The notes under the pieces are model-generated. The model was not told the DNA's origin. It worked only from the letters and a program-made list of their open reading frames with translations, and made no database searches. Shown in pieces: positions 1 through 48,150 of a stretch of 64,000 nt of DNA; positions within the stretch are counted from its first letter, which is position 1, and every line of letters begins with the position of its first letter. The position numbers and the translations under genes are program-made. The DNA is from Cyanophora paradoxa CCMP329. Taxonomy: Eukaryota; Plantae; Glaucophyta. Location: contig QPMI01000534.1 of assembly GCA_004431415.1 (NCBI GenBank), positions 1 to 64,000 of the forward strand, written 5' to 3'.

Positions 1-3000
1 TGGGGGAGCGGGGGGGCCTGGCGGGCCTTGAGCTGCCTTGCGCTGTCGAGGGCTGAAGAGGGGGCCGGGCCAGCGACCCCGAGGCCAACTTCTGCACGGC
101 GAGACATTGGCGCGAAACCCAAAATTTCCCTGCTCTAGATTGCTCTAAACTGCACTTCAGACGTGCTCAGTTTCGCGCCAATCGTTCGCTGTGCTCCGCT
201 AGAATCTCGGCTGGACATGTATGGCGTCTGGTCGATTTGCTGGATAAAATAATGGAAAGCGATTGGCGAGAAACTGAAGCGTTTAATACTAGCTAGTATG
301 CATCTTGATGCTAGAGTAAGGCTCAGTTTCGTGCGGATGCGGTACGAAATTTTCGTAGATGTATGGCCATACAAAAGCGACGAGGAAAAGGCCAGTTTCG
401 CGGCGAGCTAGCCGAGCTAGCAGCGCGCCCGGCCGCGTCTTATTGCCCCAGCGTTCGAGTCCCGGAAGGGCAGTTGGGGGAGCGGGGGGCCTTGAGCGGC
501 CTTGAGCTGCCTTGCGCTGTCGAGGGCTGAAGAGGGGGCCGGGGCGCAGCGACCCCCGAGGCCAACTTCTGCACGGCGAGACATTGGCGCGAAACCCAAA
601 ATTTCCCTGCTCTAGATTGCTCTAAACTGCACTTCAGACGTGCTCAGTTTCGCGCCAATCGTTCGCTGTGCTCCGCTAGAATCTCGGCTGGACATGTATG
701 GCGTCTGGTCGATTGGCTGGATAAAATAATGGAAAGCGATTGGCGAGAAACTGAAGCGTTTAATACTAGCTAGTATGCATCTTGATGCTAGAGTAAGGCT
801 CAGTTTCGTGCGGATGCGGTACGAAATTTTCGTAGATGTATGGCCATACAAAAGCGACGAGGAAAAGGCCAGTTTCGCGGCGAGCTAGCCGAGCTAGCAG
901 CGCGCCCGGCCGGCGTCTTATTGCCCCAGCGTTCGAGTCCCGGGAAGGGCAGTTGGGGGGAGCGGGGGGGCCTGGGCGGGCCTTGAGCTGCCTTGCGCTG
1001 TCGAGGGCTGAAGAGGGGGCCGGGGCGCAGCGACCCCCGAGGCCAACTTCTGCACGGCGAGACATTGGCGCGAAACCCAAAATTTCCCTGCTCTAGATTG
1101 CTCTAAACTGCACTTCAGACGTGCTCAGTTTCGCGCCAATCGTTCGCTGTGCTCCGCTAGAATCTCGGCTGGACATGTATGGCGTCTGGTCGATTTGGCT
1201 GGATAAAATAATGGAAAGCGATTGGCGAGAAACTGAAGCGTTTAATACTAGCTAGTATGCATCTTGATGCTAGAGTAAGGCTCAGTTTCGTGCGGATGCG
1301 GTACGAAATTTTCGTAGATGTATGGCCATACAAAGCGACGAGGAAAAGGCCAGTTTCGCGGCGAGCTAGCCGAGCTAGCAGCGCGCCCGGCCGGCGTCTT
1401 ATTGCCCAGCGTTCGAGTCCGGGAAGGGCAGTTGGGGGAGCGGGGGGCCTGGCGGGCCTTGAGCTGCCTTGCGCTGTCGAGGGCTGAAGAGGGGGCCGGG
1501 GCGCAGCGACCCCGAGGCCAACTTCTGCACGGCGAGACATTGGCGCGAAACCCAAAATTTCCCTGCTCTAGATTGCTCTAAACTGCACTTCAGACGTGCT
1601 CAGTTTCGCGCCAATCGTTCGCTGTGCTCCGCTAGAATCTCGGCTGGACATGTATGGCGTCTGGTCGATTTGGCTGGATAAAATAATGGAAAGCGATTGG
1701 CGAGAAACTGAAGCGTTTAATACTAGCTAGTATGCATCTTGATGCTAGAGTAAGGCTCAGTTTCGTGCGGATGCGGTACGAAATTTTCGTAGATGTATGG
1801 CCATACAAAAGCGACGAGGAAAAGGCCAGTTTCGCGGCGAGCTAGCCGAGCTAGCAGCGCGCCCGGCCGGCGTCTTATTGCCCCAGCGTTCGAGTCCCGG
1901 GAAGGGCAGTTGGGGGGAGCGGGGGGCCTGGGCGGGCCTTGAGCTGCCTTGCGCTGTCGAGGGCTGAAGAGGGGGCCGGGCGCAGCGACCCCGAGGCCAA
2001 CTTCTGCACGGCGAGACATTGGCGCGAAACCCAAAATTTCCCTGCTCTAGATTGCTCTAAACTGCACTTCAGACGTGCTCAGTTTCGCGCCAATCGTTCG
2101 CTGTGCTCCGCTAGAATCTCGGCTGGACATGTATGGCGTCTGGTCGATTTGGCTGGATAAAATAATGGAAAGCGATTGGCGAGAAACTGAAGCGTTTAAT
2201 ACTAGCTAGTATGCATCTTGATGCTAGAGTAAGGCTCAGTTTCGTGCGGATGCGGTACGAAATTTCGTAGATGTATGGCCATACAAAAGCGACGAGGAAA
2301 AGGCCAGTTTCGCGGCGAGCTAGCCGAGCTAGCAGCGCGCCCGGCCGGCGTCTTATTGCCCCAGCGTTCGAGTCCCGGGAAGGGCAGTTGGGGGAGCGGG
2401 GGGCCTGGGCGGGCCTTGAGCTGCCTTGCGCTGTCGAGGGCTGAAGAGGGGGCCGGGGCGCAGCGACCCCCGAGGCCAACTTCTGCACGGCGAGACATTG
2501 GCGCGAAACCCAAAATTTCCCTGCTCTAGATTGCTCTAAACTGCACTTCAGACGTGCTCAGTTTCGCGCCAATCGTTCGCTGTGCTCCGCTAGAATCTCG
2601 GCTGGACATGTATGGCGTCTGGTCGATTTGGCTGGATAAAATAATGGAAAGCGATTGGCGAGAAACTGAAGCGTTTAATACTAGCTAGTATGCATCTTGA
2701 TGCTAGAGTAAGGCTCAGTTTCGTGCGGATGCGGTACGAAATTTTCGTAGATGTATGGCCATACAAAAGCGACGAGGAAAAGGCCAGTTTCGCGGCGAGC
2801 TAGCCGAGCTAGCAGCGCGCCCGGCCGGCGTCTTATTGCCCCAGCGTTCGAGTCCCGGGAAGGGCAGTTGGGGGAGCGGGGGGCCTGGGCGGGCCTTGAG
2901 CTGCCTTGCGCTGTCGAGGGCTGAAGAGGGGGCCGGGGCGCAGCGACCCCCGAGGCCAACTTCTGCACGGCGAGACATTGGCGCGAAACCCAAAATTTCC

Positions 3001-6000
3001 CTGCTCTAGATTGCTCTAAACTGCACTTCAGACGTGCTCAGTTTCGCGCCAATCGTTCGCTGTGCTCCGCTAGAATCTCGGCTGGACATGTATGGCGTCT
3101 GGTCGATTTGGCTGGATAAAATAATGGAAAGCGATTGGCGAGAAACTGAAGCGTTTAATACTAGCTAGTATGCATCTTGATGCTAGAGTAAGGCTCAGTT
3201 TCGTGCGGATGCGGTACGAAATTTTCGTAGATGTATGGCCATACAAAAGCGACGAGGAAAAGGCCAGTTTCGCGGCGAGCTAGCCGAGCTAGCAGCGCGC
3301 CCGGCCGGCGTCTTATTGCCCCAGCGTTCGAGTCCCGGGAAGGGCAGTTGGGGGGAGCGGGGGGCCTGGGCGGGCCTTGAGCTGCCTTGCGCTGTCGAGG
3401 GCTGAAGAGGGGGCCGGGGCGCAGCGACCCCCGAGGCCAACTTCTGCACGGCGAGACATTGGCGCGAAACCCAAAATTTCCCTGCTCTAGATTGCTCTAA
3501 ACTGCACTTCAGACGTGCTCAGTTTCGCGCCAATCGTTCGCTGTGCTCCGCTAGAATCTCGGCTGGACATGTATGGCGTCTGGTCGATTTGGCTGGATAA
3601 AATAATGGAAAGCGATTGGCGAGAAACTGAAGCGTTTAATACTAGCTAGTATGCATCTTGATGCTAGAGTAAGGCTCAGTTTCGTGCGGATGCGGTACGA
3701 AATTTTCGTAGATGTATGGCCATACAAAAGCGACGAGGAAAAGGCCAGTTTCGCGGCGAGCTAGCCGAGCTAGCAGCGCGCCCGGCCGGCGTCTTATTGC
3801 CCCAGCGTTCGAGTCCCGGGAAGGGCAGTTGGGGGAGCGGGGGGCCTGGCGGGCCTTGAGCTGCCTTGCGCTGTCGAGGGCTGAAGAGGGGGCCGGGGCG
3901 CAGCGACCCCCGAGGCCAACTTCTGCACGGCGAGACATTGGCGCGAAACCCAAAATTTCCCTGCTCTAGATTGCTCTAAACTGCACTTCAGACGTGCTCA
4001 GTTTCGCGCCAATCGTTCGCTGTGCTCCGCTAGAATCTCGGCTGGACATGTATGGCGTCTGGTCGATTTGGCTGGATAAAATAATGGAAAGCGATTGGCG
4101 AGAAACTGAAGCGTTTAATACTAGCTAGTATGCATCTTGATGCTAGAGTAAGGCTCAGTTTCGTGCGGATGCGGTACGAAATTTTCGTAGATGTATGGCC
4201 ATACAAAAGCGACGAGGAAAAGGCCAGTTTCGCGGCGAGCTAGCCGAGCTAGCAGCGCGCCCGGCCGGCGTCTTATTGCCCCAGCGTTCGAGTCCCGGGA
4301 AGGGCAGTTGGGGGAGCGGGGGGCCTGGGCGGGCCTTGAGCTGCCTTGCGCTGTCGAGGGCTGAAGAGGGGGCCGGGGCGCAGCGACCCCCGAGGCCAAC
4401 TTCTGCACGGCGAGACATTGGCGCGAAACCCAAAATTTCCCTGCTCTAGATTGCTCTAAACTGCACTTCAGACGTGCTCAGTTTCGCGCCAATCGTTCGC
4501 TGTGCTCCGCTAGAATCTCGGCTGGACATGTATGGCGTCTGGTCGATTTGGCTGGATAAAATAATGGAAAGCGATTGGCGAGAAACTGAAGCGTTTAATA
4601 CTAGCTAGTATGCATCTTGATGCTAGAGTAAGGCTCAGTTTCGTGCGGATGCGGTACGAAATTTCGTAGATGTATGGCCATACAAAAGCGACGAGGAAAA
4701 GGCCAGTTTCGCGGCGAGCTAGCCGAGCTAGCAGCGCGCCCGGCCGGCGTCTTATTGCCCCAGCGTTCGAGTCCCGGGAAGGGCAGTTGGGGGAGCGGGG
4801 GGCCTGGGCGGGCCTTGAGCTGCCTTGCGCTGTCGAGGGCTGAAGAGGGGGCCGGGGCGCAGCGACCCCCGAGGCCAACTTCTGCACGGCGAGACATTGG
4901 CGCGAAACCCAAAATTTCCCTGCTCTAGATTGCTCTAAACTGCACTTCAGACGTGCTCAGTTTCGCGCCAATCGTTCGCTGTGCTCCGCTAGAATCTCGG
5001 CTGGACATGTATGGCGTCTGGTCGATTTGGCTGGATAAAATAATGGAAAGCGATTGGCGAGAAACTGAAGCGTTTAATACTAGCTAGTATGCATCTTGAT
5101 GCTAGAGTAAGGCTCAGTTTCGTGCGGATGCGGTACGAAATTTTCGTAGATGTATGGCCATACAAAAGCGACGAGGAAAAGGCCAGTTTCGCGGCGAGCT
5201 AGCCGAGCTAGCAGCGCGCCCGGCCGGCGTCTTATTGCCCCAGCGTTCGAGTCCCGGGAAGGGCAGTTGGGGGAGCGGGGGGCCTGGGCGGGCCTTGAGC
5301 TGCCTTGCGCTGTCGAGGGCTGAAGAGGGGGCCGGGGCGCAGCGACCCCCGAGGCCAACTTCTGCACGGCGAGACATTGGCGCGAAACCCAAAATTTCCC
5401 TGCTCTAGATTGCTCTAAACTGCACTTCAGACGTGCTCAGTTTCGCGCCAATCGTTCGCTGTGCTCCGCTAGAATCTCGGCTGGACATGTATGGCGTCTG
5501 GTCGATTTGGCTGGATAAAATAATGGAAAGCGATTGGCGAGAAACTGAAGCGTTTAATACTAGCTAGTATGCATCTTGATGCTAGAGTAAGGCTCAGTTT
5601 CGTGCGGATGCGGTACGAAATTTTCGTAGATGTATGGCCATACAAAAGCGACGAGGAAAAGGCCAGTTTCGCGGCGAGCTAGCCGAGCTAGCAGCGCGCC
5701 CGGCCGGCGTCTTATTGCCCCAGCGTTCGAGTCCGGGAAGGGCAGTTGGGGGGAGCGGGGGGCCTGGGCGGGCCTTGAGCTGCCTTGCGCTGTCGAGGGC
5801 TGAAGAGGGGCCGGGGCGCAGCGACCCCCGAGGCCAACTTCTGCACGGCGAGACATTGGCGCGAAACCCAAAATTTCCCTGCTCTAGATTGCTCTAAACT
5901 GCACTTCAGACGTGCTCAGTTTCGCGCCAATCGTTCGCTGTGCTCCGCTAGAATCTCGGCTGGACATGTATGGCGTCTGGTCGATTTGGCTGGATAAAAT

Positions 6001-9000
6001 AATGGAAAGCGATTGGCGAGAAACTGAAGCGTTTAATACTAGCTAGTATGCATCTTGATGCTAGAGTAAGGCTCAGTTTCGTGCGGATGCGGTACGAAAT
6101 TTTCGTAGATGTATGGCCATACAAAAGCGACGAGGAAAAGGCCAGTTTCGCGGCGAGCTAGCCGAGCTAGCAGCGCGCCCGGCCGGCGTCTTATTGCCCC
6201 AGCGTTCGAGTCCCGGGAAGGCAGTTGGGGGAGCGGGGGGCCTGGGCGGGCCTTGAGCTGCCTTGCGCTGTCGAGGGCTGAAGAGGGGCCGGGGCGCAGC
6301 GACCCCGAGGCCAACTTCTGCACGGCGAGACATTGGCGCGAAACCCAAAATTTCCCTGCTCTAGATTGCTCTAAACTGCACTTCAGACGTGCTCAGTTTC
6401 GCGCCAATCGTTCGCTGTGCTCCGCTAGAATCTCGGCTGGACATGTATGGCGTCTGGTCGATTTGGCTGGATAAAATAATGGAAAGCGATTGGCGAGAAA
6501 CTGAAGCGTTTAATACTAGCTAGTATGCATCTTGATGCTAGAGTAAGGCTCAGTTTCGTGCGGATGCGGTACGAAATTTTCGTAGATGTATGGCCATACA
6601 AAAGCGACGAGGAAAAGGCCAGTTTCGCGGCGAGCTAGCCGAGCTAGCAGCGCGCCCGGCCGGCGTCTTATTGCCCCAGCGTTCGAGTCCCGGGAAGGGC
6701 AGTTGGGGGAGCGGGGGGCCTGGGCGGGCCTTGAGCTGCCTTGCGCTGTCGAGGGCTGAAGAGGGGGCCGGGGCGCAGCGACCCCGAGGCCAACTTCTGC
6801 ACGGCGAGACATTGGCGCGAAACCCAAAATTTCCCTGCTCTAGATTGCTCTAAACTGCACTTCAGACGTGCTCAGTTTCGCGCCAATCGTTCGCTGTGCT
6901 CCGCTAGAATCTCGGCTGGACATGTATGGCGTCTGGTCGATTTGGCTGGATAAAATAATGGAAAGCGATTGGCGAGAAACTGAAGCGTTTAATACTAGCT
7001 AGTATGCATCTTGATGCTAGAGTAAGGCTCAGTTTCGTGCGGATGCGGTACGAAATTTTCGTAGATGTATGGCCATACAAAAGCGACGAGGAAAAGGCCA
7101 GTTTCGCGGCGAGCTAGCCGAGCTAGCAGCGCGCCCGGCCGGCGTCTTATTGCCCCAGCGTTCGAGTCCCGGGAAGGGCAGTTGGGGGAGCGGGGGGCCT
7201 GGGCGGGCCTTGAGCTGCCTTGCGCTGTCGAGGGCTGAAGAGGGGGCCGGGGCGCAGCGACCCCGAGGCCAACTTCTGCACGGCGAGACATTGGCGCGAA
7301 ACCCAAAATTCCCTGCTCTAGATTGCTCTAAACTGCACTTCAGACGTGCTCAGTTTCGCGCCAATCGTTCGCTGTGCTCCGCTAGAATCTCGGCTGGACA
7401 TGTATGGCGTCTGGTCGATTTGGCTGGATAAAATAATGGAAAGCGATTGGCGAGAAACTGAAGCGTTTAATACTAGCTAGTATGCATCTTGATGCTAGAG
7501 TAAGGCTCAGTTTCGTGCGGATGCGGTACGAAATTTTCGTAGATGTATGGCCATACAAAAGCGACGAGGAAAAGGCCAGTTTCGCGGCGAGCTAGCCGAG
7601 CTAGCAGCGCGCCCGGCCGGCGTCTTATTGCCCAGCGTTCGAGTCCCGGGAAGGGCAGTTGGGGGAGCGGGGGGGCCTGGGCGGGCCTTGAGCTGCCTTG
7701 CGCTGTCGAGGGCTGAAGAGGGGCCGGGGCGCAGCGACCCCGAGGCCAACTTCTGCACGGCGAGACATTGGCGCGAAACCCAAAATTTCCCTGCTCTAGA
7801 TTGCTCTAAACTGCACTTCAGACGTGCTCAGTTTCGCGCCAATCGTTCGCTGTGCTCCGCTAGAATCTCGGCTGGACATGTATGGCGTCTGGTCGATTTG
7901 GCTGGATAAAATAATGGAAAGCGATTGGCGAGAAACTGAAGCGTTTAATACTAGCTAGTATGCATCTTGATGCTAGAGTAAGGCTCAGTTTCGTGCGGAT
8001 GCGGTACGAAATTTTCGTAGATGTATGGCCATACAAAAGCGACGAGGAAAAGGCCAGTTTCGCGGCGAGCTAGCCGAGCTAGCAGCGCGCCCGGCCGGCG
8101 TCTTATTGCCCAGCGTTCGAGTCCCGGAAGGGCAGTTGGGGGAGCGGGGGGCCTGGGCGGGCCTTGAGCTGCCTTGCGCTGTCGAGGGCTGAAGAGGGGC
8201 CGGGGCGCAGCGACCCCCGAGGCCAACTTCTGCACGGCGAGACATTGGCGCGAAACCCAAAATTTCCCTGCTCTAGATTGCTCTAAACTGCACTTCAGAC
8301 GTGCTCAGTTTCGCGCCAATCGTTCGCTGTGCTCCGCTAGAATCTCGGCTGGACATGTATGGCGTCTGGTCGATTTGGCTGGATAAAATAATGGAAAGCG
8401 ATTGGCGAGAAACTGAAGCGTTTAATACTAGCTAGTATGCATCTTGATGCTAGAGTAAGGCTCAGTTTCGTGCGGATGCGGTACGAAATTTTCGTAGATG
8501 TATGGCCATACAAAAGCGACGAGGAAAAGGCCAGTTTCGCGGCGAGCTAGCCGAGCTAGCAGCGCGCCCGGCCGGCGTCTTATTGCCCAGCGTTCGAGTC
8601 CCGGAAGGGCAGTTGGGGGAGCGGGGGGCCTGGGCGGGCCTTGAGCTGCCTTGCGCTGTCGAGGGCTGAAGAGGGGGCCGGGGCGCAGCGACCCCGAGGC
8701 CAACTTCTGCACGGCGAGACATTGGCGCGAAACCCAAAATTTCCCTGCTCTAGATTGCTCTAAACTGCACTTCAGACGTGCTCAGTTTCGCGCCAATCGT
8801 TCGCTGTGCTCCGCTAGAATCTCGGCTGGACATGTATGGCGTCTGGTCGATTTGGCTGGATAAAATAATGGAAAGCGATTGGCGAGAAACTGAAGCGTTT
8901 AATACTAGCTAGTATGCATCTTGATGCTAGAGTAAGGCTCAGTTTCGTGCGGATGCGGTACGAAATTTTCGTAGATGTATGGCCATACAAAAGCGACGAG

Positions 9001-12000
9001 GAAAAGGCCAGTTTCGCGGCGAGCTAGCCGAGCTAGCAGCGCGCCCGGCCGGCGTCTTATTGCCCAGCGTTCGAGTCCCGGGAAGGGCAGTTGGGGGGAG
9101 CGGGGGGCCTGGGCGGGCCTTGAGCTGCCTTGCGCTGTCGAGGGCTGAAGAGGGGGCCGGGGCGCAGCGACCCCGAGGCCAACTTCTGCACGGCGAGACA
9201 TTGGCGCGAAACCCAAAATTTCCCTGCTCTAGATTGCTCTAAACTGCACTTCAGACGTGCTCAGTTTCGCGCCAATCGTTCGCTGTGCTCCGCTAGAATC
9301 TCGGCTGGACATGTATGGCGTCTGGTCGATTTGGCTGGATAAAATAATGGAAAGCGATTGGCGAGAAACTGAAGCGTTTAATACTAGCTAGTATGCATCT
9401 TGATGCTAGAGTAAGGCTCAGTTTCGTGCGGATGCGGTACGAAATTTTCGTAGATGTATGGCCATACAAAAGCGACGAGGAAAAGGCCAGTTTCGCGGCG
9501 AGCTAGCCGAGCTAGCAGCGCGCCCGGCCGGCGTCTTATTGCCCAGCGTTCGAGTCCCGGGAAGGGCAGTTGGGGGAGCGGGGGGCCTGGGCGGGCCTTG
9601 AGCTGCCTTGCGCTGTCGAGGGCTGAAGAGGGGGCCGGGGCGCAGCGACCCCGAGGCCAACTTCTGCACGGCGAGACATTGGCGCGAAACCCAAAATTTC
9701 CCTGCTCTAGATTGCTCTAAACTGCACTTCAGACGTGCTCAGTTTCGCGCCAATCGTTCGCTGTGCTCCGCTAGAATCTCGGCTGGACATGTATGGCGTC
9801 TGGTCGATTTGGCTGGATAAAATAATGGAAAGCGATTGGCGAGAAACTGAAGCGTTTAATACTAGCTAGTATGCATCTTGATGCTAGAGTAAGGCTCAGT
9901 TTCGTGCGGATGCGGTACGAAATTTTCGTAGATGTATGGCCATACAAAGCGACGAGGAAAAGGCCAGTTTCGCGGCGAGCTAGCCGAGCTAGCAGCGCGC
10001 CCGGCCGGCGTCTTATTGCCCCAGCGTTCGAGTCCGGGAAGGGCAGTTGGGGGAGCGGGGGGCCTGGGCGGGCCTTGAGCTGCCTTGCGCTGTCGAGGGC
10101 TGAAGAGGGGCCGGGGCGCAGCGACCCCCGAGGCCAACTTCTGCACGGCGAGACATTGGCGCGAAACCCAAAATTTCCCTGCTCTAGATTGCTCTAAACT
10201 GCACTTCAGACGTGCTCAGTTTCGCGCCAATCGTTCGCTGTGCTCCGCTAGAATCTCGGCTGGACATGTATGGCGTCTGGTCGATTTGGCTGGATAAAAT
10301 AATGGAAAGCGATTGGCGAGAAACTGAAGCGTTTAATACTAGCTAGTATGCATCTTGATGCTAGAGTAAGGCTCAGTTTCGTGCGGATGCGGTACGAAAT
10401 TTTCGTAGATGTATGGCCATACAAAAGCGACGAGGAAAAGGCCAGTTTCGCGGCGAGCTAGCCGAGCTAGCAGCGCGCCCGGCCGGCGTCTTATTGCCCC
10501 AGCGTTCGAGTCCCGGGAAGGGCAGTTGGGGGAGCGGGGGGCCTGGGCGGGCCTTGAGCTGCCTTGCGCTGTCGAGGGCTGAAGAGGGGGCCGGGCGCAG
10601 CGACCCCCGAGGCCAACTTCTGCACGGCGAGACATTGGCGCGAAACCCAAAATTTCCCTGCTCTAGATTGCTCTAAACTGCACTTCAGACGTGCTCAGTT
10701 TCGCGCCAATCGTTCGCTGTGCTCCGCTAGAATCTCGGCTGGACATGTATGGCGTCTGGTCGATTTGGCTGGATAAAATAATGGAAAGCGATTGGCGAGA
10801 AACTGAAGCGTTTAATACTAGCTAGTATGCATCTTGATGCTAGAGTAAGGCTCAGTTTCGTGCGGATGCGGTACGAAATTTTCGTAGATGTATGGCCATA
10901 CAAAAGCGACGAGGAAAAGGCCAGTTTCGCGGCGAGCTAGCCGAGCTAGCAGCGCGCCCGGCCGGCGTCTTATTGCCCAGCGTTCGAGTCCCGGGAAGGG
11001 CAGTTGGGGGAGCGGGGGGCCTGGGCGGGCCTTGAGCTGCCTTGCGCTGTCGAGGGCTGAAGAGGGGGCCGGGGCGCAGCGACCCCGAGGCCAACTTCTG
11101 CACGGCGAGACATTGGCGCGAAACCCAAAATTTCCCTGCTCTAGATTGCTCTAAACTGCACTTCAGACGTGCTCAGTTTCGCGCCAATCGTTCGCTGTGC
11201 TCCGCTAGAATCTCGGCTGGACATGTATGGCGTCTGGTCGATTTGGCTGGATAAAATAATGGAAAGCGATTGGCGAGAAACTGAAGCGTTTAATACTAGC
11301 TAGTATGCATCTTGATGCTAGAGTAAGGCTCAGTTTCGTGCGGATGCGGTACGAAATTTTCGTAGATGTATGGCCATACAAAAGCGACGAGGAAAAGGCC
11401 AGTTTCGCGGCGAGCTAGCCGAGCTAGCAGCGCGCCCGGCCGGCGTCTTATTGCCCCAGCGTTCGAGTCCCGGAAGGGCAGTTGGGGGAGCGGGGGGCCT
11501 GGGCGGGCCTTGAGCTGCCTTGCGCTGTCGAGGGCTGAAGAGGGGCCGGGGCGCAGCGACCCCCGAGGCCAACTTCTGCACGGCGAGACATTGGCGCGAA
11601 ACCCAAAATTTCCCTGCTCTAGATTGCTCTAAACTGCACTTCAGACGTGCTCAGTTTCGCGCCAATCGTTCGCTGTGCTCCGCTAGAATCTCGGCTGGAC
11701 ATGTATGGCGTCTGGTCGATTTGGCTGGATAAAATAATGGAAAGCGATTGGCGAGAAACTGAAGCGTTTAATACTAGCTAGTATGCATCTTGATGCTAGA
11801 GTAAGGCTCAGTTTCGTGCGGATGCGGTACGAAATTTTCGTAGATGTATGGCCATACAAAAGCGACGAGGAAAAGGCCAGTTTCGCGGCGAGCTAGCCGA
11901 GCTAGCAGCGCGCCCGGCCGGCGTCTTATTGCCCAGCGTTCGAGTCCCGGGAAGGGCAGTTGGGGGAGCGGGGGGCCTGGGCGGGCCTTGAGCTGCCTTG

Positions 12001-15000
12001 CGCTGTCGAGGGCTGAAGAGGGGCCGGGGCGCAGCGACCCCCGAGGCCAACTTCTGCACGGCGAGACATTGGCGCGAAACCCAAAATTTCCCTGCTCTAG
12101 ATTGCTCTAAACTGCACTTCAGACGTGCTCAGTTTCGCGCCAATCGTTCGCTGTGCTCCGCTAGAATTCGGCTGGACATGTATGGCGTCTGGTCGATTTG
12201 GCTGGATAAAATAATGGAAGCGATTGGCGAGAAACTGAAGCGTTTAATACTAGCTAGTATGCATCTTGATGCTAGAGTAAGGCTCAGTTTCGTGCGGATC
12301 CGGTACGAAATTTTCGTAGATGTATGGCCATACAAAAGCGACGAGGAAAAGGCCAGTTTCGCGGCGAGCTAGCCGAGCTAGCAGCGCGCCCGGCCGGCGT
12401 CTTATTGCCCAGCGTTCGAGTCCCGGAAGGGCAGTTGGGGGGAGCGGGGGGCCTGGGCGGGCCTTGAGCTGCCTTGCGCTGTCGAGGGCTGAAGAGGGGC
12501 CGGGGCGCAGCGACCCCGAGGCCAACTTCTGCACGGCGAGACATTGGCGCGAAACCAAAATTTCCCTGCTCTAGATTGCTCTAAACTGCACTTCAGACGT
12601 GCTCAGTTTCGCGCCAATCGTTCGCTGTGCTCCGCTAGAATCTCGGCTGGACATGTATGGCGTCTGGTCGATTTGGCTGGATAAAATAATGGAAGCGATT
12701 GGCGAGAAACTGAAGCGTTTAATACTAGCTAGTATGCATCTTGATGCTAGAATAAGGCTCAGTTTCGTGCGGATCGGTACGAAATTTCGTAGATGTATGG
12801 CCATACAAAGCGACGAGGAAAAGGCCAGTTTCGCGGCGAGCTAGCCGAGCTAGCAGCGCGCCCGGCCGGCGTCTTATTGCCCAGCGTTCGAGTCCCGGGA
12901 AGGCAGTTGGGGGAGCGGGGGGCCTGGCGGGCCTTGAGCTGCCTTGCGCTGTCGAGGGCTGAAGAGGGGCCGGGCGCAGCGACCCCCGAGGCCAACTTCT
13001 GCACGGCGAGACATTGGCGCGAAACCAAAATTTCCCTGCTCTAGATTGCTCTAAACTGCACTTCAGACGTGCTCAGTTTCGCGCCAATCGTTCGCTGTGC
13101 TCCGCTAGAATTCGGCTGGACATGTATGGCGTCTGTCGATTTGCTGGATAAAATAATGGAAGCGATTGGCGAGAAACTGAAGCGTTTAATACTAGCTAGT
13201 ATGCATCTTGATGCTAGAGTAAGCTCAGTTTCGTGCGGATCGGTACGAAATTTTCGTAGATGTATGGCCATACAAAGCGACGAGGAAAAGGCCAGTTTCG
13301 CGGCGAGCTAGCCGAGCTAGCAGCGCGCCCGGCCGGCGTCTTATTGCCCAGCGTTCGAGTCCCGGGAAGGGCAGTTGGGGGAGCGGGGGCCTGGGCGGGC
13401 CTTGAGCTGCCTTGCGCTGTCGAGGGCTGAAGAGGGGCCGGGGCGCAGCGACCCCGAGGCCAACTTCTGCACGGCGAGACATTGGCGCGAAACCAAAATT
13501 TCCCTGCTCTAGATTGCTCTAAACTGCACTTCGACGTGCTCAGTTTCGCGCCAATCGTTCGCTGTGCTCCGCTAGAATTCGGCTGGACATGTATGGCGTC
13601 TGGTCGATTTGGCTGGATAAAATAATGGAAGCGATTGGCGAGAAACTGAAGCGTTTAATACTAGCTAGTATGCATCTTGATGCTAGATAAGGCTCAGTTT
13701 CGTGCGGATCGGTACGAAATTTTCTAGATGTATGGCCATACAAAGCGACGAGGAAAGGCCAGTTTCGCGGCGAGCTAGCCGAGCTAGCAGCGCGCCCGGC
13801 CGGCGTCTTATTGCCCAGCGTTCGAGTCCCGGAAGGGCAGTTGGGGGAGCGGGGGGCCTGGGCGGCCTTGAGCTGCCTTGCGCTGTCGAGGGCTGAAGAG
13901 GGGCCGGGCGCAGCGACCCCCGAGGCCAACTTCTGCACGGCGAGACATTGGCGCGAAACCAAAATTTCCCTGCTCTAGATTGCTCTAAACTGCACTTCGA
14001 CGTGCTCAGTTTCGCGCCAATCGTTCGCTGTGCTCCGCTAGAATTCGGCTGGACATGTATGCGTCTGGTCGATTTGGCTGGATAAAATAATGGAAAGCGA
14101 TTGGCGAGAAACTGAAGCGTTTAATACTAGCTAGTATGCATCTTGATGCTAGAATAAGGCTCAGTTTCGTGCGGATCGGTACGAAATTTTCTAGATGTAT
14201 GGCCATACAAAGCGACGAGGAAAAGGCCAGTTTCGCGGCGAGCTAGCCGAGCTAGCAGCGCGCCGGCCGGCGTCTTATTGCTCCAGCGTTCGAGTCCCGG
14301 AAGGGCAGTTGGGGGAGCGGGGGGCCTGGGCGGGCCTTGAGCTGCCTTGCGCTGTCGAGGCTGAAGAGGGGCCGGGGCGCAGCGACCCCGAGGCCAACTT
14401 CTGCACGGCGAGACATTGGCGCGAAACCAAAATTTCCCTGCTCTAGATTGCTCTAAACTGCACTTCTGACGTGCTCAGTTTCGCGCCAATCGTTCGCTGT
14501 GCTCCGCTAGAATTCGGCTGGACATGTATGGCGTCTGGTCGATTTGGCTGGATAAAATAATGGAAGCGATTGGCGAGAAACTGAAGCGTTTAATACTAGC
14601 TAGTATGCATCTTGATGCTAGAATAAGGCTCAGTTTCGTGCGGATCGGTACGAAATTTTCTAGATGTATGGCCATACAAAGCGACGAGAAAAGGCCAGTT
14701 TCGCGGCGAGCTAGCCGAGCTAGCAGCGCGCCCGGCCGCGTCTTATTGCTCCAGCGTTCGAGTCCCGGAAGGCAGTTGGGGGAGCGGGGGGCCTGGGCGG
14801 CCTTGAGCTGCCTTGCGCTGTCGAGGGCTGAAGAGGGGCCGGGCGCAGCGACCCCGAGGCCAACTTCTGCACGGCGAGACATTGGCGCGAAACCAAAATT
14901 TCCCTGCTCTAGATTGCTCTAACTGCACTTCGACGTGCTCAGTTTCGCGCCAATCGTTCGCTGTGCTCCGCTAGAATTCGGCTGGACATGTATGGCGTCT

Positions 15001-15476
15001 GGTCGATTTGGCTGGATAAAATAATGGAAGCGATTGGCGAGAAACTGAAGCGTTTAATACTAGCTAGTATGCATCTTGATGCTAGATAAGGCTCAGTTTC
15101 GTGCGGATCCGGTACGAAATTTTCTAGATGTATGGCCATACAAAGCGACGAGGAAAAGGCCAGTTTCGCGGCGAGCTAGCCGAGCTAGCAGCGCGCCCGG
15201 CCGGCGTCTTATTGCTCCAGCGTTCGAGTCCCGGGAAGGGCAGTTGGGGGGAGCGGGGGGGCCTGGGCGGGCCTTGAGCTGCCTTGCGCTGTCGAGGGCT
15301 GAAGAGGGGGCCGGGGCGCAGCGACCCCCGAGGCCAACTTCTGCACGGCGAGACATTGGCGCGAAACCAAAAATTTCCCTGCTCTAGATTGCTCTAAACT
15401 GCACTTCTGACGTGCTCAGTTTCGCGCCAATCGTTCGCTGTGCTCCGCTAGAATTTCGGCTGGACATGTATGGCGT
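1..15476. repeat. ~480-bp tandem satellite array, ~32 copies, open at the left edge of the window
   Basis: The unit recurs with period ~478-480 (e.g. CTGCTCTAGATTGCTCTAAAC at 2521 and 3001). Copies up to ~12 kb differ almost only in homopolymer lengths. The array stops abruptly at ...GGACATGTATGGCG-TTTTTGGTG (~15476). Confidence 0.98.
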
Positions 15477-37411: not shown

Positions 37412-39831
<2,420 letters not shown>

Positions 39832-40645: not shown

Positions 40646-41082
40646 ACAATCCCAGCTAGTATCGATGACATTGTACAATATGGAATATCATACCAATCAC
40701 TTGTAGATCTTACAAATGCGCGTGACTCAGCCGCAGCGGTCAAGCCGGAGTCTGTACAGGAGTGGTCGCAGGAAAATTTGGAAAGGGGCATGAATACTAT
40801 GAAAATAGCCATGGACCGTTACCGAGTGACATGAATCTTAACCTACATCCTATTTAAAAATGATCTATACACAGCGAGCCTTATAGAGGGGGTGAGACAA
40901 TGACGCTCACTCTGCACTATACAATTCTGAAAAGCTGTGGGTAGAGCTGATCTTAAGGCAGTCAATGGTGCAAATATAAGAATCTGCCTGTCCGGCGGTC
41001 TGCCGGGCTACAACTACAGCTACAAAAGCAGCCTGGGCCTGCTCAAGCTTGATGCCCGATGAGGAGGGCAGGGTTTCGGGCA

Positions 41083-41169
41083 GGGCGGGGCCCGAGGCCT
41101 GGCCGGGCGGGGCCCGAGGCCTGGCCGGGCGGGGCCCGAGGCCTGGCCGGGCGGGGCCCGAGGCCTGGC
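41083..41169. repeat. 22-bp minisatellite, ~4 copies
   Basis: (GGGCGGGGCCCGAGGCCTGGCC)n lies immediately past the putative stop of the phytochrome-cyclase gene. Confidence 0.9.
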
Positions 41170-41174
41170 GCGGG

Positions 41175-44100
41175 CTACAGGGTGCTCGAGTTGCGGCGCC
41201 CGAAGAAGGCGGCGGCCGAGCTGCGCGCGGGGCGGCGAGCGCGGGGGCGGGGGCGGCGCGCGTGAGCGGCGGCCAAGGCAGAGGTGGAGGCGGAGGCGAC
41301 GGCGGCGGGTCCTCCCTTCCTCTCCCTGGGCCCGGCTCTCCCCTTTATAAAGGCAGGGGCGCACGCGACGGAGGAGCTCAGGCGACTGAGCGTCCGCGAG
41401 AGGATGGGGGAGAGGGGGGCGGGTGACTCGCCCCCCTCCTCCCCCTCCTCCCCCTCGCCCCCGCTCCCGGCCCCGGCCCCGTCCTCCCCGCTGAAGGCGC
41501 GCGGAGGTAAGAGGCCGCCGGGGAGTAGAGGGGCGGGGCGGGGCGGGGCGCACGTGGGGAGGCCCCGCCGGGGAAGGTTCGCCGGGTCGCACTTGCCCAC
41601 CTGCCCGCCCCGGGGCGCGGCTTCAGCTCGCACGCACGACTCAGATCAGAGTTCGCACCTCGCCCAGCAAGTAGAACGTGGTCATCGGGCCCTGCGCGCG
41701 CGCGCGGGCGGGCCGTCCGGTCAGCCGCGAGCCTGGCCGGGCGGGGCCGGGCGGGGCGGGGCGAGCGGGCGCGGGCGCGCCTTGCCCTTGACGTCGATCT
41801 GGCCGCGCGGCTCGAAGACGAAGGCGTCCCGCAGCCGCTCCCGCACCGCCCCGCTCACGTGGATCTGCACGCGGATCAAATCTAGATCTGGCTCGAGCTT
41901 GCGGCGCGGATGGAGCGGGGCGCGGGCGGACCATGCCGGGGGTGCCGTGGCTCTCCATGCGCGAGGCCTGAACGTACAAGGAGCTCAGAACAAGAAGCTT
42001 AGGGAGGAGGGGGAGGAGGGGGCGGGCCGTGTTGACGGTGTCGCCCCAGACGTCGTACACGAACTTCTTCACCCCGATGACCCCCTGCGCGCGTGCAGCG
42101 CACGCGCGCCCCTCGGGTGAGCGGAGGCCAGCGAGGCCGGCCGGCCGGCGAGCGGGCGGGCGGGCGTGCGGGCGGGCGGGAGGGCGCGGGAGCACCGCGA
42201 CGACGTCGCCGGTGTGCATCCCGACGCTGGCAATGGGCGGGCGGCTGGGTCACTTGTGTGGAAAAGGGGCAAGGGTAGAGGGGTGCAAGGTCAGGGTCTA
42301 GGTCTAGCCCAGGCGAGGACGAGGGTCCTGGGGGAGAGGCCAGGTCAAGGTCTAGGCCGGGCGGGTCTTGGGTCTTGGGCCGGGCGGGCGGCGGGTATGA
42401 GGCGAGAAAGGCAGGCCGCATGGTGAAGCTTAAGCGTGTGCCGCCGGAGTCCCGCTCTAGGTAGAATTCGAGAGCAAGGGATCTGGGCGCTCGGAGTTGG
42501 GCGGGCGGGGGTCTATGCGCGGACCGCATGGCGAAGCGGGTGCCGCCAAAGTGGCGCTGCTGCCGTATCGCCGCCATCATGTCCACCGCGAACTGCGGGG
42601 GCGAGGGCTCACGCGGGGAAGGAAGGACGAAGAAGGAGGCGGGCGGGCGGGCGCACGCGGGCCATGCGGGCGGTGGGCGCGGCGGGGTCCCCGCTGACCT
42701 CCTCCTCCGGCAGGCCGCTCGCCACCACTGCGAAAGGGGGCGGGCGGCTCGAGCCCGGGCGGCGCCAAGCGCGCAGCTCGGGTCGGAGCTCAGGCGGGGG
42801 CGCACTGTAGCAGTCGCCGATGGTCTTGATCTGGCGGGAGGGCGCGGGCGGGGACGCGCGCACGCACGCGTCAGACCGCGGGGCGGGCAGCGCAGCGCAG
42901 GGCGGGGCGGGACGCCGCCCTACTATCGCGCTAAAGGGCGGGGGCGGGGGGCGGGGCGGGGGGCGGGGGGCGGGGCGGACCTTCTCGAGGCGGTGCTTGT
43001 CGACGAGCGCGTCAAAGTCCTGCGGCCGGCCCGGCCCGGCCCGGGCGTGTCGGCGGGGGAGGGCCTCGCGGAGCGGCGGCTCGTCTTAAGGTTCGCTCGC
43101 GCAAAGGGGACCCCAGGCCCGGAGCTCTCTATCTGAGCTCGAGCGGGCGGGGGGCGGGGGCGGGGGGCGGACGGTGAAGACGGCGTTGAGGCGGTCGACG
43201 AGGTCCCCCGGGTCCATCCCCGACGCCAGCCGCGTGAACCTGTCCGCCCCCGCGCAGGGGGCCTTGTGTTAGCTCGCCGCCGCCTCCGCCCCGGGTTTAA
43301 GAGAGGGGGGCCCTCCCGGGGCCTTAGAGAGAAAGGCCTTAGCGCGGCCCAGGGCTTGGAGGAGGGAGGGGCGCCCCGGGGCCCATTCGTCGAGCCGGAG
43401 AGAGAGGCGGAGGCTGTACCCCCTGGGCTCGGCGGCGGCGAGGCCTAGGAACCCACTGGCGCCCCGCGGGATCGCGCAGCTGCAGCAGCGCACCCGACGA
43501 TGTCTGCGAAGAGGATGCAGACTGCGGGGCGGGGCGGGGCGCCCGCGTGAGCTCGAGCGGGGCAGGCGCCGGCTAATGATCGGCGGCTGGCGGCTCTCTC
43601 ATCACCGTTGCGGTGGAGGCGACTCTGGACGCCTGCGGATCGGATTGAGGCCGGTCAGGGCGCGGCGGCGAAGAAAGGGAAGGAGCGCTAGGGCAAGGCA
43701 AGGCCGGGGCCGGGTGCACGGTGCGTCTTCATCATCTCCCGCATGATCTGCGAGCGCGGGCGCCGATCGTACATAAACGGCAGGAGCACTGCCATACGCG
43801 CGGATGCGGGTGCGCATAAAAGGCCCCAATCGTGCATAAACGGCAGGAGGCGGCCGCGGAGGGATAAAGCCTAAGCCGGCTGAACCGATCGGGGGCGCGG
43901 TACCTTCGGGGGCAGGAGGTTGCAGAGGAGGAGGTCCCGGCTCTGCAGCTCCTCCTCGATGCTCCGCTTCGACGCCGCCTCCCCCTTGATCCGCGCCTGC
44001 CCGAGGGAGCGTTGAAGTGAGGGGCGCCCTGGGCAGGGGCGGGCCGCCGCCGCCGCCGCCGACGCGCCTCGAGGGCGCGGAGGGTCTTGAGGAAGGAGCG

Positions 44101-47100
44101 CGCCGCCGCCGCCTCGCCGGCGCCCCAGGGCCTGCCCGAGCGAGCGAGCTCGGCGCCAGGCGGGGCGGGGCGGGGCGGGGCGAAGCGAAAGCCCGCGCCT
44201 GCAGCGGCCGCGGACGGACTGGCGCCACGCGGCGAAGGAGCCCCGCGGCCGCAGCGCCTGCGCGCGCGCCCCTCAGCTGAGCGCTCGCGCGCCCCTCAGC
44301 TGAGCGGGCCTGGGCCTCGGGGCCGGAGGAGGAGCGGAGCTGGGCGGCGGTGTAGGGGAGCTCCTCCGAAGAGCCGCTCCACGCCACCTCGTGCGCCCAC
44401 TCTGCGCCGCGGCCCCGCCAACGTGACTCAGGGGCCCGGAGAGCAAGCTTGGCCCGCGGCCCGCAGTCGCTCGCGGACCGCGGCGGAACCATATGACGGC
44501 CGCGTCGCGCCGCCCGCTCAGGAACGCCACCAGAGCCCCGCTCGCCGCCGCCGCGTACTGGAGGGAGGTCAGGGGGATCGGAGGCGGGGGGAAGAGAGGG
44601 GGGGGGGGGGGGGGTGGGGGGGGGGGCGCCTTCTCGGCGGGGGGGTGGATGCGCTGCAGGCAGTCCCACGACGCCACGACGTCCATCTGATCGCGAACGA
44701 AGTTCGACCAAGGAAGCTTGGAGGGGCCCGCGGGGGTACGGCACCGCACCGTGCTGGCGGAGAGGGCGGGGAAGAGGGCGAGGCACTCGGCCTCGGAGGG
44801 GGTCTCCCCCCTGGGGGCCCCGGGTGAGCCACTCGGGCGGGCTGGCTGGGGCGCTCGGGCGGGGCTGCCCGCACGAGAGGCTGGCGCTGCCGCTGGCGAC
44901 GATGGCGCAGCCCGTCGCCTCCACCAGCTGCGCGCGCGCGGGGGGCGGGAGCGTCTGCGTCGGCCTCGAGCTGGATCGGAGGGGCGGGCTGGATCGGAGG
45001 GGCGGGCTGGATCAAGAGGAGAAGGACTAGCTGGATCTAGAAGAGTGGACGTCAGCAGATCCAGGAGAGCGGACGTCCCCGGGCCCGGTTGAAGGCGTTG
45101 GGGCCCAGGCGGCGGGGCGCGCTAGCGCTGGATCTAGTCTCTGCTGGATCTAGAAGAGTGGACGTCCAGCTAAGGTCCCGCCTGGAGCCGGAGGCGACTG
45201 GGGCGTCTGGGCGGCGGGGCGGGCGCGCACGCGGGAGACGTGCGAGTCGCGCTCCTGCAGGGCCGCCAGGAAGCGCCCCTCCGCCGCGCTGCGGATCAGC
45301 GCCGCCTGCGCGCGGGGCACATGAGCAGGAAGAAGAGAGGGCGGAGGGCGGGGGGGCGCGGGGGGGCCGGGCGGGCCTGCATGGCGGAGACGCGGGCCTC
45401 GCCTGCGCGCTCCTCGCGCTCCCGCGACGCCCGCAGCGCCACCGAGAGGCTGCCGGGGCCGGGGCCCCCGGCGTCAGTCACGGCGGGGAGAGAAGGGGGG
45501 CGGGAGGGGAGCGGCACCTGTGGGCGACGACGAGCACGGCGGAGCGGACCTCGAAGCCGACCCTAAGGGCGGGGAGGCAGGCGACGTAGGCGTCGTCAGG
45601 CGGATGCAGATGCAGAAATTGCGGGGGATGGCAAGGACGAGGAGGAGGACGAAGAGATGTTCGGGGGGGGGGGGGGGAAGGGCCTCGCTCACTCGCGCGG
45701 GGTGCGGTGGTGCCCGACGGCGAGGCCCCACAGCTCCTCACGGGCCACCCCCCGCGCCTCCGCCTCCTCCTCCGGTGTCGCCGCCGGGGGCGGCGGGGGC
45801 GCCCCGACGACGATGGCGGTCGTGAGGGAGGCCCGCGTGCTCATGTTCTGCAGGCGCAGGCGCGTCAGTCGGTGGAGCCGAGCCGAGCCGAGGGCGCGGC
45901 GCGGCGCGCCTGCATGTACGCCGCGTGGCACGCGTGCGGCGCCCGGAACTGCGGGGGAGGGGAGGGGAGGGGAGGGGAGGGGAGGGGAGGGGAGTGGTTA
46001 GGGGCACGAGCGGGGGCGGAGCCGGCGGAGGGGTACGGGGCCGCGCCTTGAGCCCGGCGGTCGCGGCGGCGAGGCGGGCATCGACGGCCTCCGGTACCAG
46101 CGCGGCCGGCCGCGACGCAGCGTCCACGATCATTCGCGACCTGGGGGGTACAGGCACAGACCGTCAGGGAGGGGGTACGCGAGCATTGGAGGAGCGAAGG
46201 GGGGTACGCGCCGCTCGCGGAGGAAGAGGGCGCGCATCTCCTCCGGGATGTCCGAGGCCGGGAAGTGTAGGTCGAGGTAGGAGTCGTACCCCGGATCGTT
46301 CAGGTACTCCCCCACCACGTGCCCGTGGCCGTCTCCCATGAACTTCTGCGGGCGATCGCGAACTCAGGCGGGGCTACCCCCCGCTTGGGGTTGGGAGGGG
46401 GGGGAGCAACCGCACGTAAATCATGACGCGGTCGTACCCCGAGATGCTGGCCATGGCGCGGGCGGCCGCCGCGCAGAGCTCCGCCTCGGGTCTGGCGATC
46501 GGCCCTTGGTTTCTCAGGGGGTACGAGGGAGGGGGCGGGCGGGGCGGCGCACAGGTCCCCGCGGAGCGCCTCTACCCCGGCGACGAGCCGCGCGGAAAGG
46601 TCAACGACGCTGTAGCCGGGGCCTTCGCGCTTGGCCCCTGCGGTCCGGATCCGGTCGGGCGCGGCTCGAATGGAATTAGATTCGGGGCGGGATCGGGTCG
46701 GGCGCACGCTCGCACTCCAGTATGACGTGGCCGCACCGGAGCGTTGGGAAAGCGTCCCAGCGGGTCAGCGTGCCTTGGACGGTGAACGCGAGGGGGAAGG
46801 GCGCGCTCGGCTGCGGCTGCCCCCGCGCCTCCGCGAAAGCCCGCACGTGAGACGCATCCTCCACGAGCTCGTCTATCTTCTTCCCGAGCAGGGCCGGCGC
46901 GGGACAGCCCAAGAGCTGCGCAAGCCGTTCGGCAACTTAAGCTTCCGTGTACGTACGTATACGCGGCGGCGCGGCGGAGCGGGCGGGAGGGCGGGCGGGA
47001 GGCGCGCCTCGACGTTGGCGGAGGCTCGCCGCACATACAAACCCTCGTCCAAACACAGGACGACCGCGAACGGTTGGATCTGCGGGGGGAGGGATCGGAT

Positions 47101-47300
47101 CGTGGGAGCGCTGGCGCGGACCGGAGGCTACGTATACCCGCGAATGTGACGCACTTTGTTTAATGTAAACGTGCCGAAGGGCAACTCCAGCACTACATCA
47201 CAAACGGGCTCCCCGGCTGAGGGAGGCATCGAACGACCGTCTGACGTGCTTTACGATGATTACAGGTGGTGTTCCGGCACTCGGCGCTGTTAGCTATGCT
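41175..47300 (-). CDS. Phytochrome (PAS-GAF-PHY) fused to a class III adenylyl cyclase; >30 exons; exact start and last exons uncertain
   Basis: In order: [10 protein letters not shown]...SANVE (PAS); [42 protein letters not shown] (GAF); [33 protein letters not shown] (PHY); [11 protein letters not shown] (linker); [58 protein letters not shown] (cyclase). The segments join in frame at GT/GC-AG junctions. Confidence 0.9.
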
Positions 47301-48150
47301 GCTCCAACAAGACTGGCTTTGCTTGGTAAGGTTTCTGAGTACCCCCCAAGTTGGCGCTGGCACCGCATGCGCATGCGCGCACGCGCTGCGTTCGACGCGA
47401 GTCGGTCATCTTGCAATTGGCATCCTGCGCGAGTTGAGTCGACGTTTCGGGCGCATGCGCAAGATGACATGTGCAAGGCCAAGCGCTAGCACACTCGCGC
47501 GCGCGTGCCCGAACTGATCATGACGCGCTAGCTTACTGGCCCATGCATATGGCCAGCGGCGCCAGCGAGCGCCGCGGCGGCGCCGCGCGCTAGCCTAGCT
47601 ACAGCCTCCACAGACCTAGACGACTCGAGAGCTCGGGGGATCATCGGATTCTGGTACGACATTGAAAGCTCAGCCGCAGTCTGTGCGCTGCCTGCACTAC
47701 CTCCTGCTGCAGCAGCTACAGTTTCAAAGAAATACTCTGGGTGAGATCCTATCTGAAATCTGGACAGCCTGTGCGCAGCTGGTGAACAGGGTCTAGCTGT
47801 GATAGCCTAGCTGCCACCTAGATGCCTAGGCCTACGCCTCAAGTACAAGTACGATTTGACAGATTGAGAGTGATTGAGAGATTTGTCGCTGCTGACATAC
47901 CGACATCACATTCAGAGAATACATGCAAAAGTGAAAGAAAACACAACACTACGACTGAACAGGAGAAAAAGCACCGCCGGCGATAATTGCGATGATACGG
48001 CGAAAAAAAGGGGAACTGACCATGTGCAATACGCAAACAAGGGGTTGAATAATGCATGAATAGTGGGACCTCGGCCACCTTCTGGGGGGGGGGGGGGGGG
48101 GGGGGGAGTGTGGCCGTGTCCGGCTGCCCGGGGCCGGGGACCGCCTGGGC

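What the first reader, a model, noticed from the sequence alone, without database searches (positions are those of the whole stretch)
41175..47300. Natural phytochrome-adenylyl cyclase fusion: candidate bilin-based light-switchable cAMP source hidden in >30 small exons
Seen: hand-splicing gives one continuous frame with the photosensory hallmarks [12 protein letters not shown] (~46416-46440), PASDIP (~46244-46261), the GAF CH motif (RAPHACH, exon 45910-45948), LWGL, tongue WSG and PRxSF (~44234-44248). Then, with no PAS repeat, histidine kinase or receiver, a ~60-aa helical linker leads into a cyclase domain (~43523-41659). Established: the GAF Cys-His is the bilin attachment site in plant and Cph1-type phytochromes. 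Archaeplastid phytochromes normally signal through PAS plus histidine-kinase(-related) modules, and the direct PHY-cyclase fusions I know are engineered optogenetic tools. Inference: this is a native light-regulated cyclase. I cannot confirm it is undescribed, and automated annotation could easily split or miss it.
Basis: partly seen in the sequence, partly recalled or inferred. Interest (0 to 1): 0.93.

Follow-up and report, generated by a model that had tools for sequence, protein, structure and literature searches.

The report
Natural algal phytochrome-adenylyl cyclase fusion
The alga Cyanophora paradoxa expresses one many-exon gene that joins an intact pigment-binding light sensor (phytochrome) directly to an intact cAMP-making enzyme, a layout I found elsewhere only in laboratory-built optogenetic tools and which the public gene model truncates, although control by light has not been tested.

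Summary
A minus-strand gene of Cyanophora paradoxa has 33 mapped coding exons (47229-41659) plus a probable low-complexity tail to 41175. They give at least 761 codons without a stop: PAS-GAF-PHY, one long helix ending in a cyclase transducer element, then a class III cyclase. Spliced contigs from two studies cross the PHY-cyclase boundary; one 2393-nt contig spans all domains, and contig offsets match the exon model to the base. The bilin pocket is intact (GAF Cys255-His256, DIP, PRxSF). The cyclase keeps both metal Asp, the ATP-specifying Lys/Asp and the Asn/Arg pair. The public model (tig00021037_g17417.t1) reads into intron 23 and loses the cyclase. No protein seen in my searches had this architecture. 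Best reading: a homodimeric light-switched adenylyl cyclase, a natural counterpart of engineered PaaC/IlaC/DdPAC (about 0.68). Bilin binding, photocycle, activity and the sign of regulation are untested. Novelty is not secured: a 2026 review's figure legend lists a cyclase domain among algal phytochromes, and the primary Rockwell/Duanmu papers were not available. The scan noted a different, dead-cyclase phytochrome and a phytochrome-phosphodiesterase elsewhere in this genome (unchecked).

The parts
47230..47336 (-). 5' untranslated part of exon 1 (contig end, not a mapped start site)
   Evidence: contigs reach 47317-47336 in X1-X3; no RNA depth above 47360
47155..47229 (-). exon 1 coding part, ATG at 47229; holds Cys10, which aligns with the biliverdin Cys of bacteriophytochromes but 16 rather than 11 residues before IQP
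46708..47079 (-). PAS domain (residues 25-116), exons 2-3
   Evidence: Pfam PAS_2 E 1e-4 on P0001; model pLDDT mostly above 85
45377..46637 (-). GAF domain (151-333) and GAF-PHY helix, exons 4-11, with a plant-type acidic loop insertion
   Evidence: Pfam GAF; aligns to Arabidopsis phyB
46244..46261 (-). PASDIP motif, Asp204
45925..45930 (-). Cys255-His256, the bilin attachment site of plant/Cph1 type (exon 8, 45948-45910)
   Evidence: aligns with the Cys-His of phyB; no Cys at this column in 66 bacteriophytochromes
44068..45305 (-). PHY domain with tongue (WSG in exon 17; PRGSF 44248-44234), exons 12-19
   Evidence: Pfam PHY E 3e-30
43606..44131 (-). signalling helix (residues about 515-559, heptad pattern) running from PHY into the cyclase transducer element (LLxNLLP from residue 555 at 43930, then a short helix), exons 19-22
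   Evidence: one continuous helix in the AlphaFold2 model; exon 20 hits the region upstream of bacterial cyclases; spacing to the first metal Asp is 33, as in 29 of 32 bacterial relatives
41659..43521 (-). class III nucleotidyl cyclase domain, exons 23-33: metal Asp588 (43504-43502) and Asp632 (42815-42813), specificity Lys628 (42827-42825) and Asp702 (42054-42052), transition-state Asn709 (42033-42031) and Arg713 (41961-41959)
   Evidence: Pfam Guanylate_cyc above cut-off on exon 30; PDB adenylate cyclases; exon-by-exon colinear profile hits; same residues in 71-77 of 80 bacterial relatives
41175..41600 (-). probable low-complexity C-terminal tail to a TAG stop; likely holds further short introns (candidates 41553-41491 and 41261-41221)
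   Evidence: open frame; GC3 0.89 and splice-site scores; no Pfam match; splicing not tested with reads
44928..45230 (-). intron 12 (303 nt), from which the public model takes a false 31-residue insert
43240..43493 (-). intron 23 (254 nt), into which the public model reads and ends, losing the cyclase
   Evidence: CT..AC joint skipping 254 nt in X1, X2, X3 and absent from the DNA-like run X8

Best explanation
The gene encodes a soluble, one-component, light-switched adenylyl cyclase. Shown here: one spliced transcript, the domain order, and intact residue sets at both ends. Inferred from family knowledge: a bilin (probably phycocyanobilin, as reported for glaucophyte phytochromes) is bound to Cys255 and isomerises on light absorption; the PHY tongue refolds; the long PHY helix of the parallel dimer, a coiled coil continuous with the cyclase transducer element, shifts; this repositions the two cyclase domains, which form two shared active sites, and changes the rate of ATP to cAMP conversion. 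Whether light turns it on or off, and at which colours, cannot be read from the sequence. In the cell it would convert light colour or intensity directly into a cAMP signal without a kinase relay (inference).
For: Single spliced contig from 47336 to 41661 in X3 and PHY-to-cyclase contigs in X1 and X2, two studies. Pocket and tongue residues Arg168, Tyr172, Phe174, Tyr195, Asp204, Arg219, Arg250, Cys255, His256, Tyr259, His307, WxG and PRxSF all match phytochrome consensus. PAS-GAF-PHY fold, mean pLDDT 82.7, TM about 0.65-0.7 to solved phytochromes including the engineered cyclase fusion 6FHT. One helix links PHY to the transducer motif at the canonical spacing to the first metal Asp. All six catalytic positions are of adenylyl type. 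Etzl 2018 (PMC5995499) shows that this same design, a PHY helix fused into the transducer element, gives light-regulated cyclases, and that Lys at the specificity position gives adenylyl activity.
Against: No biochemical test exists. The sensor is divergent (about 30% identical to its nearest relatives; weak PAS and GAF Pfam scores). In engineered fusions only 3 of 15 linker registers were light-regulated, so a fusion alone does not guarantee coupling. No orthologue was found in other algae, so conservation cannot vouch for function. The runs are RNA by guess only and contigs are assemblies, not single molecules.
Confidence: 0.68

Rival explanations
1. The protein is a real fusion and an active cyclase, but light has little or no control over it. 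The phytochrome part binds a bilin or tetrapyrrole as a ligand or metabolic sensor, or serves as a dimer scaffold, and the cyclase is set by other inputs such as bicarbonate, calcium or phosphorylation of the tail.
For: Divergent sensor; coupling is register-sensitive in engineered fusions; a Ser/Pro/Glu-rich tail could carry regulation.
Against: Every photocycle residue checked, including the tongue, is retained despite 70% divergence elsewhere; the linker is a continuous helix into a transducer element.
Confidence: 0.17
2. The protein is a photoreceptor whose cyclase domain is weak or inactive as a homodimer and signals by heterodimerising with another cyclase, for example the dead-cyclase phytochrome noted elsewhere in this genome, or makes cGMP rather than cAMP.
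For: The scan's notes report a phytochrome with a dead cyclase and many other cyclases in this genome (unchecked); class III cyclases often work as heterodimers (established knowledge).
Against: All six catalytic positions are present in one chain, as in homodimeric bacterial enzymes, with Lys/Asp rather than the Glu/Cys of guanylyl cyclases.
Confidence: 0.11
3. Two adjacent genes, or a mis-assembly: a truncated phytochrome followed by a separate cyclase gene, much as the public annotation implies.
For: The public model ends just inside the cyclase; contigs are assemblies and could bridge neighbours.
Against: No stop in 761 codons; every intron from 19 to 23 is short (71-254 nt) with canonical ends; the same contig at constant depth carries the joints on both sides of the boundary in three runs from two studies; offsets match to the base; GC3 0.94.
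Confidence: 0.04

Closest known systems
Engineered phytochrome cyclases PaaC/PagC (Deinococcus BphP + Synechocystis Cya2, PDB 6FHT), IlaC and DdPAC
   Same: PAS-GAF-PHY joined by a helix and transducer element straight to a class III cyclase (PMC5995499; fold match).
   Different: Those are artificial, bind biliverdin at an N-terminal Cys and give 4- to 7-fold control of cAMP (PMC9614035). This one is natural and eukaryotic, has the GAF Cys of the plant/Cph1 type, a longer linker helix and a C-terminal tail.
Glaucophyte phytochrome sensors (GPS, e.g. CparGPS1)
   Same: Same organism; knotted PAS-GAF-PHY core with plant-like features (top PDB sequence hits are phyB/phyA).
   Different: GPS are described with one PAS and a His-retaining kinase domain (PMC4525182); this protein has neither. 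No GPS sequence was retrieved, so its place in the GPS clade was not tested.
Natural photoactivated cyclases: bPAC and Euglena PAC (BLUF), mPAC (flavin mononucleotide), cPAC of cyanobacteria (cyanobacteriochrome, phycocyanobilin), rhodopsin guanylyl cyclases
   Same: One polypeptide couples a light sensor to a class III cyclase.
   Different: None of those listed uses a full PAS-GAF-PHY phytochrome. cPAC is the only natural bilin one listed (blue/green, about 3-fold) and uses a stand-alone GAF sensor.
Algal phytochrome(s) drawn with an adenylate/guanylate cyclase domain in PMC13150293 Fig. 1 (after Rockwell 2014, Fortunato 2016, Rockwell and Lagarias 2020)
   Same: A phytochrome with a nucleotidyl cyclase domain is evidently on record in some alga.
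   Different: Lineage and layout are not given in the legend and the figure is not held. From memory only, unverified: an earlier survey showed a cyclase-homology domain in a prasinophyte or cryptophyte phytochrome with additional PAS or kinase modules. I found no report of a direct fusion or of measured activity.
Bacteriophytochrome diguanylate cyclases (PAS-GAF-PHY-GGDEF)
   Same: Natural direct fusion of the photosensory core to a nucleotide cyclase through a helix; common among the hits.
   Different: GGDEF makes c-di-GMP from GTP; bacterial; biliverdin-type Cys.

Membership tests
Canonical (knotted) phytochrome | PAS-GAF-PHY in this order | tested here: met
   Pfam PAS_2, GAF, PHY above cut-off; fold
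Canonical (knotted) phytochrome | Bilin-binding Cys (GAF Cys-His for plant/Cph1 type) | tested here: met
   Cys255-His256 aligns with phyB
Canonical (knotted) phytochrome | DIP motif, pocket Tyr/Arg/His residues, tongue WxG and PRxSF | tested here: met
Canonical (knotted) phytochrome | Covalent bilin adduct and reversible photocycle | not testable with these tools
   needs recombinant holoprotein
Class III adenylyl cyclase | Guanylate_cyc domain, complete and colinear | tested here: met
   exon-by-exon hits over profile positions 85-256; Pfam above cut-off on exon 30; joined domain not searched
Class III adenylyl cyclase | Two metal-binding Asp and the transition-state Asn/Arg | tested here: met
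   Asp588, Asp632, Asn709, Arg713
Class III adenylyl cyclase | ATP-specifying Lys and Asp (Glu and Cys in guanylyl cyclases) | tested here: met
   Lys628, Asp702
Class III adenylyl cyclase | Cyclase transducer element ahead of the catalytic domain | tested here: met
   motif at 555-561, spacing 33 as in 29 of 32 relatives; helix-break-helix in the model
Class III adenylyl cyclase | Makes cAMP from ATP | not testable with these tools
   needs an assay
Photoactivated adenylyl cyclase | Sensor and cyclase in one polypeptide | tested here: met
Photoactivated adenylyl cyclase | Activity changes with light | not testable with these tools
   needs an assay
Glaucophyte phytochrome sensor (GPS) as described | Single PAS plus His-retaining kinase domain after PHY | tested here: not met
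   no PAS, kinase or receiver between PHY and the stop; definition
Glaucophyte phytochrome sensor (GPS) as described | Photosensory core falls in the GPS clade | not tested
   no GPS sequence was retrieved
Canonical plant phytochrome | PAS-PAS repeat and kinase-related domain | tested here: not met

The most novel reading that the evidence does not exclude
This is the first natural full phytochrome (PAS-GAF-PHY) wired directly to an active adenylyl cyclase. It is a bilin-based, photoreversible cAMP source with an evolved linker and is undescribed because the gene model truncates it. With the phytochrome-phosphodiesterase noted elsewhere in the genome, it would form a light-colour-controlled cAMP circuit in glaucophytes.
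Probability: 0.4. Interest if true: 0.88.

Novelty: new variant of a known kind. Interest (0 to 1): 0.72.

Why it matters
Red-light control of cAMP has had to be engineered, and the tools reach only about 4- to 7-fold regulation against several hundred-fold for the natural blue-light bPAC (PMC9614035). A natural phytochrome-cyclase would show how evolution solved the linker problem and could be a better long-wavelength tool or design template. For algal biology it would give glaucophyte phytochrome signalling a direct second-messenger output, unlike the kinase or nuclear routes known in Archaeplastida, and a simple test (cyaA complementation under light). It also shows that the public Cyanophora models hide domain architectures.

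Tried and rejected
It was built in scratch only to check the frame and contig offsets, to align it with the public model P0001 and to read motif positions. Searches used single exons, unjoined genomic frames or P0001. So there is no full-length fold, no Pfam score for the whole cyclase domain and no homologue search with the cyclase half. Homologue searches with P0001 (whole, 470-622, 160-275) listed bacterial phytochromes with kinase, GGDEF/EAL, PAS or other outputs and none with PF00211; none of 354 other fetched proteins hit a cyclase profile. These searches are word- and length-limited and even missed plant and glaucophyte phytochromes, so the blank is weak. The 15 bacterial cyclase ORFs scanned carried no phytochrome part; the other loci were not scanned for one. 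The one metagenome hit was a phytochrome without cyclase. ESM Atlas gave only low-score leads (PHY, HNOBA/cyclase) and no PHY-cyclase cluster by shape. The frame holding exons 25-27 found nothing in PDB or Pfam because of in-frame intron sequence. An alternative exon-1 donor near 47136 was rejected by contig offsets. Rockwell 2014, Duanmu 2014, Rockwell and Lagarias 2017 and 2020 and Blain-Hartung 2018 are not held. The Cyanophora genome paper mentions neither phytochrome nor cyclase. Diurnal expression tables use other gene ids and were cut. The Atlas, Rfam and neighbouring-gene checks gave no functional context.

Full report
Observation. The region is a GC-rich, intron-dense gene on the minus strand. 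A model built from coordinates has 33 coding exons from ATG 47229 to 41659, 2283 nt, 761 codons, no stop; all acceptors are AG, donors are 22 GT and 11 GC, GC3 is 0.94. Median exon is 67 nt and median intron 74 nt. A further open frame runs from 41600 to a TAG at 41175 with GC3 0.89 and candidate short introns; it has no Pfam match and was not covered by the read test.

Transcript evidence. Ten public runs hold the stretch, all one organism. Three runs guessed to be RNA, from two studies, give contigs with CT..AC joints at the predicted introns; these joints are absent from the DNA-like run X8. The spliced length between six pairs of anchor positions equals the model to the base. The X3 contig (2393 nt) extends 592 nt below 43904, to 41661, so it covers PAS through the end of the cyclase; the X1 and X2 contigs extend 212 nt, to 42808, past the second metal Asp. 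Contigs are assemblies and the RNA label is a guess, but splicing itself shows RNA origin, and the two-gene reading has little left.

Identity and annotation. The exon-6 peptide matched one protein at 100%: EukProt EP00741 Cyanophora paradoxa tig00021037_g17417.t1, 669 aa. That model agrees with mine through residue 377, adds a 31-residue insert from intron 12, agrees again to the first cyclase strand, then reads into intron 23 and ends. Pfam sees only PAS_2, GAF and PHY in it. The contigs exclude both the insert and the read-through. So the fusion is invisible in the public protein set.

Sensor. The best PDB sequence matches are plant phyB and phyA (E 1e-43), just ahead of bacteriophytochromes, at about 30% identity. 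Cys255-His256 aligns with the chromophore site of phyB. Against 66 bacterial relatives the pocket and tongue positions (Arg168, Tyr172, Phe174, Tyr195, Asp204-Ile-Pro, Arg219, Arg250, His256, Tyr259, His307, WxG, PRxSF) match the consensus. Cys10 aligns with their invariant biliverdin Cys but at a different spacing, so a second attachment site is possible but weak. AlphaFold2 on P0001 1-622 gives mean pLDDT 82.7, with the false insert disordered, and matches solved PAS-GAF-PHY modules at TM about 0.65-0.7, including 6FHT. Phycocyanobilin is the reported chromophore of glaucophyte phytochromes, and their spectra are strongly tuned (PMC13150293), so the colour range cannot be assumed to be red/far-red.

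Linker. The last PHY helix continues without a break for 45 residues (model residues about 515-559) to an LLxNLLP motif, then breaks and forms a short helix. The segment has a heptad pattern (64-69% hydrophobic at a/d in the best registers), and the motif lies 33 residues before the first metal Asp, as in 29 of 32 bacterial cyclases where it could be measured. This is the position and form of the cyclase transducer element that Etzl 2018 included on purpose when fusing a phytochrome to a cyclase; there 3 of 15 registers were light-regulated, and one-residue changes inverted the sign (PMC5995499).

Cyclase. Exon 30 passes the Pfam Guanylate_cyc cut-off and matches adenylate cyclases in PDB. Scored one by one against a profile of 15 bacterial relatives, exons 23-33 fall in order over profile positions 85-256. 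The chain holds Asp588 and Asp632 (metal), Lys628 and Asp702 (adenine specificity) and Asn709 and Arg713 (transition state); Lys628, Asp702 and the Asn/Arg pair are shared with 71-77 of 80 bacterial relatives. The roles of these positions are established knowledge for class III cyclases; the Glu-to-Lys switch to adenylyl activity is also stated. All six in one chain fit a homodimer with two active sites.

Mechanism. Shown: one transcript, domain order, intact residue sets, helical continuity in a model. Inferred: bilin attachment, photoisomerisation, tongue refolding, a shift of the coiled coil and transducer element, and a change in cAMP synthesis. I put this at 0.68. Rivals are a light-independent cyclase (0.17), a weak or heterodimer-dependent or cGMP-making output (0.11) and two genes (0.04). 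The sign of regulation is unpredictable.

Comparison and novelty. It works like PaaC, IlaC and DdPAC, which are engineered and give 4- to 7-fold control; natural photoactivated cyclases on record use flavin, rhodopsin or cyanobacteriochrome sensors (PMC9614035; PMC12558739). Glaucophyte GPS are described with PAS plus histidine kinase (PMC4525182), which this protein lacks; that survey lists three Cyanophora phytochromes. No listed homologue carried PF00211, no other fetched protein hit a cyclase profile, and the Atlas and metagenome searches found no such fusion; these searches are of limited sensitivity. Against novelty, the Fig. 1 legend of PMC13150293 names an adenylate/guanylate cyclase among algal phytochrome domains, and a review states loosely that bacterial phytochromes signal through nucleotidyl cyclases (PMC8707292). 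The primary surveys could not be read. I therefore file it as a new variant of a known kind, with about even odds that the architecture has been drawn before, and found no report of measured activity.

Scan context. Unchecked notes report other Cyanophora phytochromes fused to a dead cyclase, a phosphodiesterase and a bHLH domain. They suggest a family expansion around cAMP but are leads only; none concerns this gene.

Limits. The joined protein was not searched or folded; it was used only in local scripts for frame, offset, motif and pairwise checks.

Noticed in passing
window 1-15476: Tandem array of a 479-bp unit, 32.5 copies, 98% identical, with steady GC skew; no Rfam match. Probably a satellite.
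   Followed up: partly
window 37849-39219 (+): Pieces of an EPSP synthase gene (Pfam E 6e-17), convergent with the phytochrome-cyclase gene.
   Followed up: no
window 48266 upward (+): A probable divergently transcribed gene begins about 1 kb from the phytochrome start; no Pfam match on the raw frames.
   Followed up: no
window 47200-47202 (-): Cys10 aligns with the invariant biliverdin-binding Cys of 66 bacteriophytochromes while the GAF Cys is also present; a two-Cys photocycle or dual chromophore use is possible.
   Followed up: partly
window 41659-47229 (-): One third of the splice donors are GC (11 of 33) with a strong GYRCGC-like consensus, a likely cause of poor gene models in this genome.
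   Followed up: partly
window 41079-41175: 22-bp unit repeated 4.4 times directly after the putative stop codon.
   Followed up: no
window 42229-42554: Low-depth contigs in all three RNA-like runs cover intron 28 unspliced (depth 2-4 against 12-39 for the spliced form): some intron retention or pre-mRNA inside the cyclase domain.
   Followed up: no
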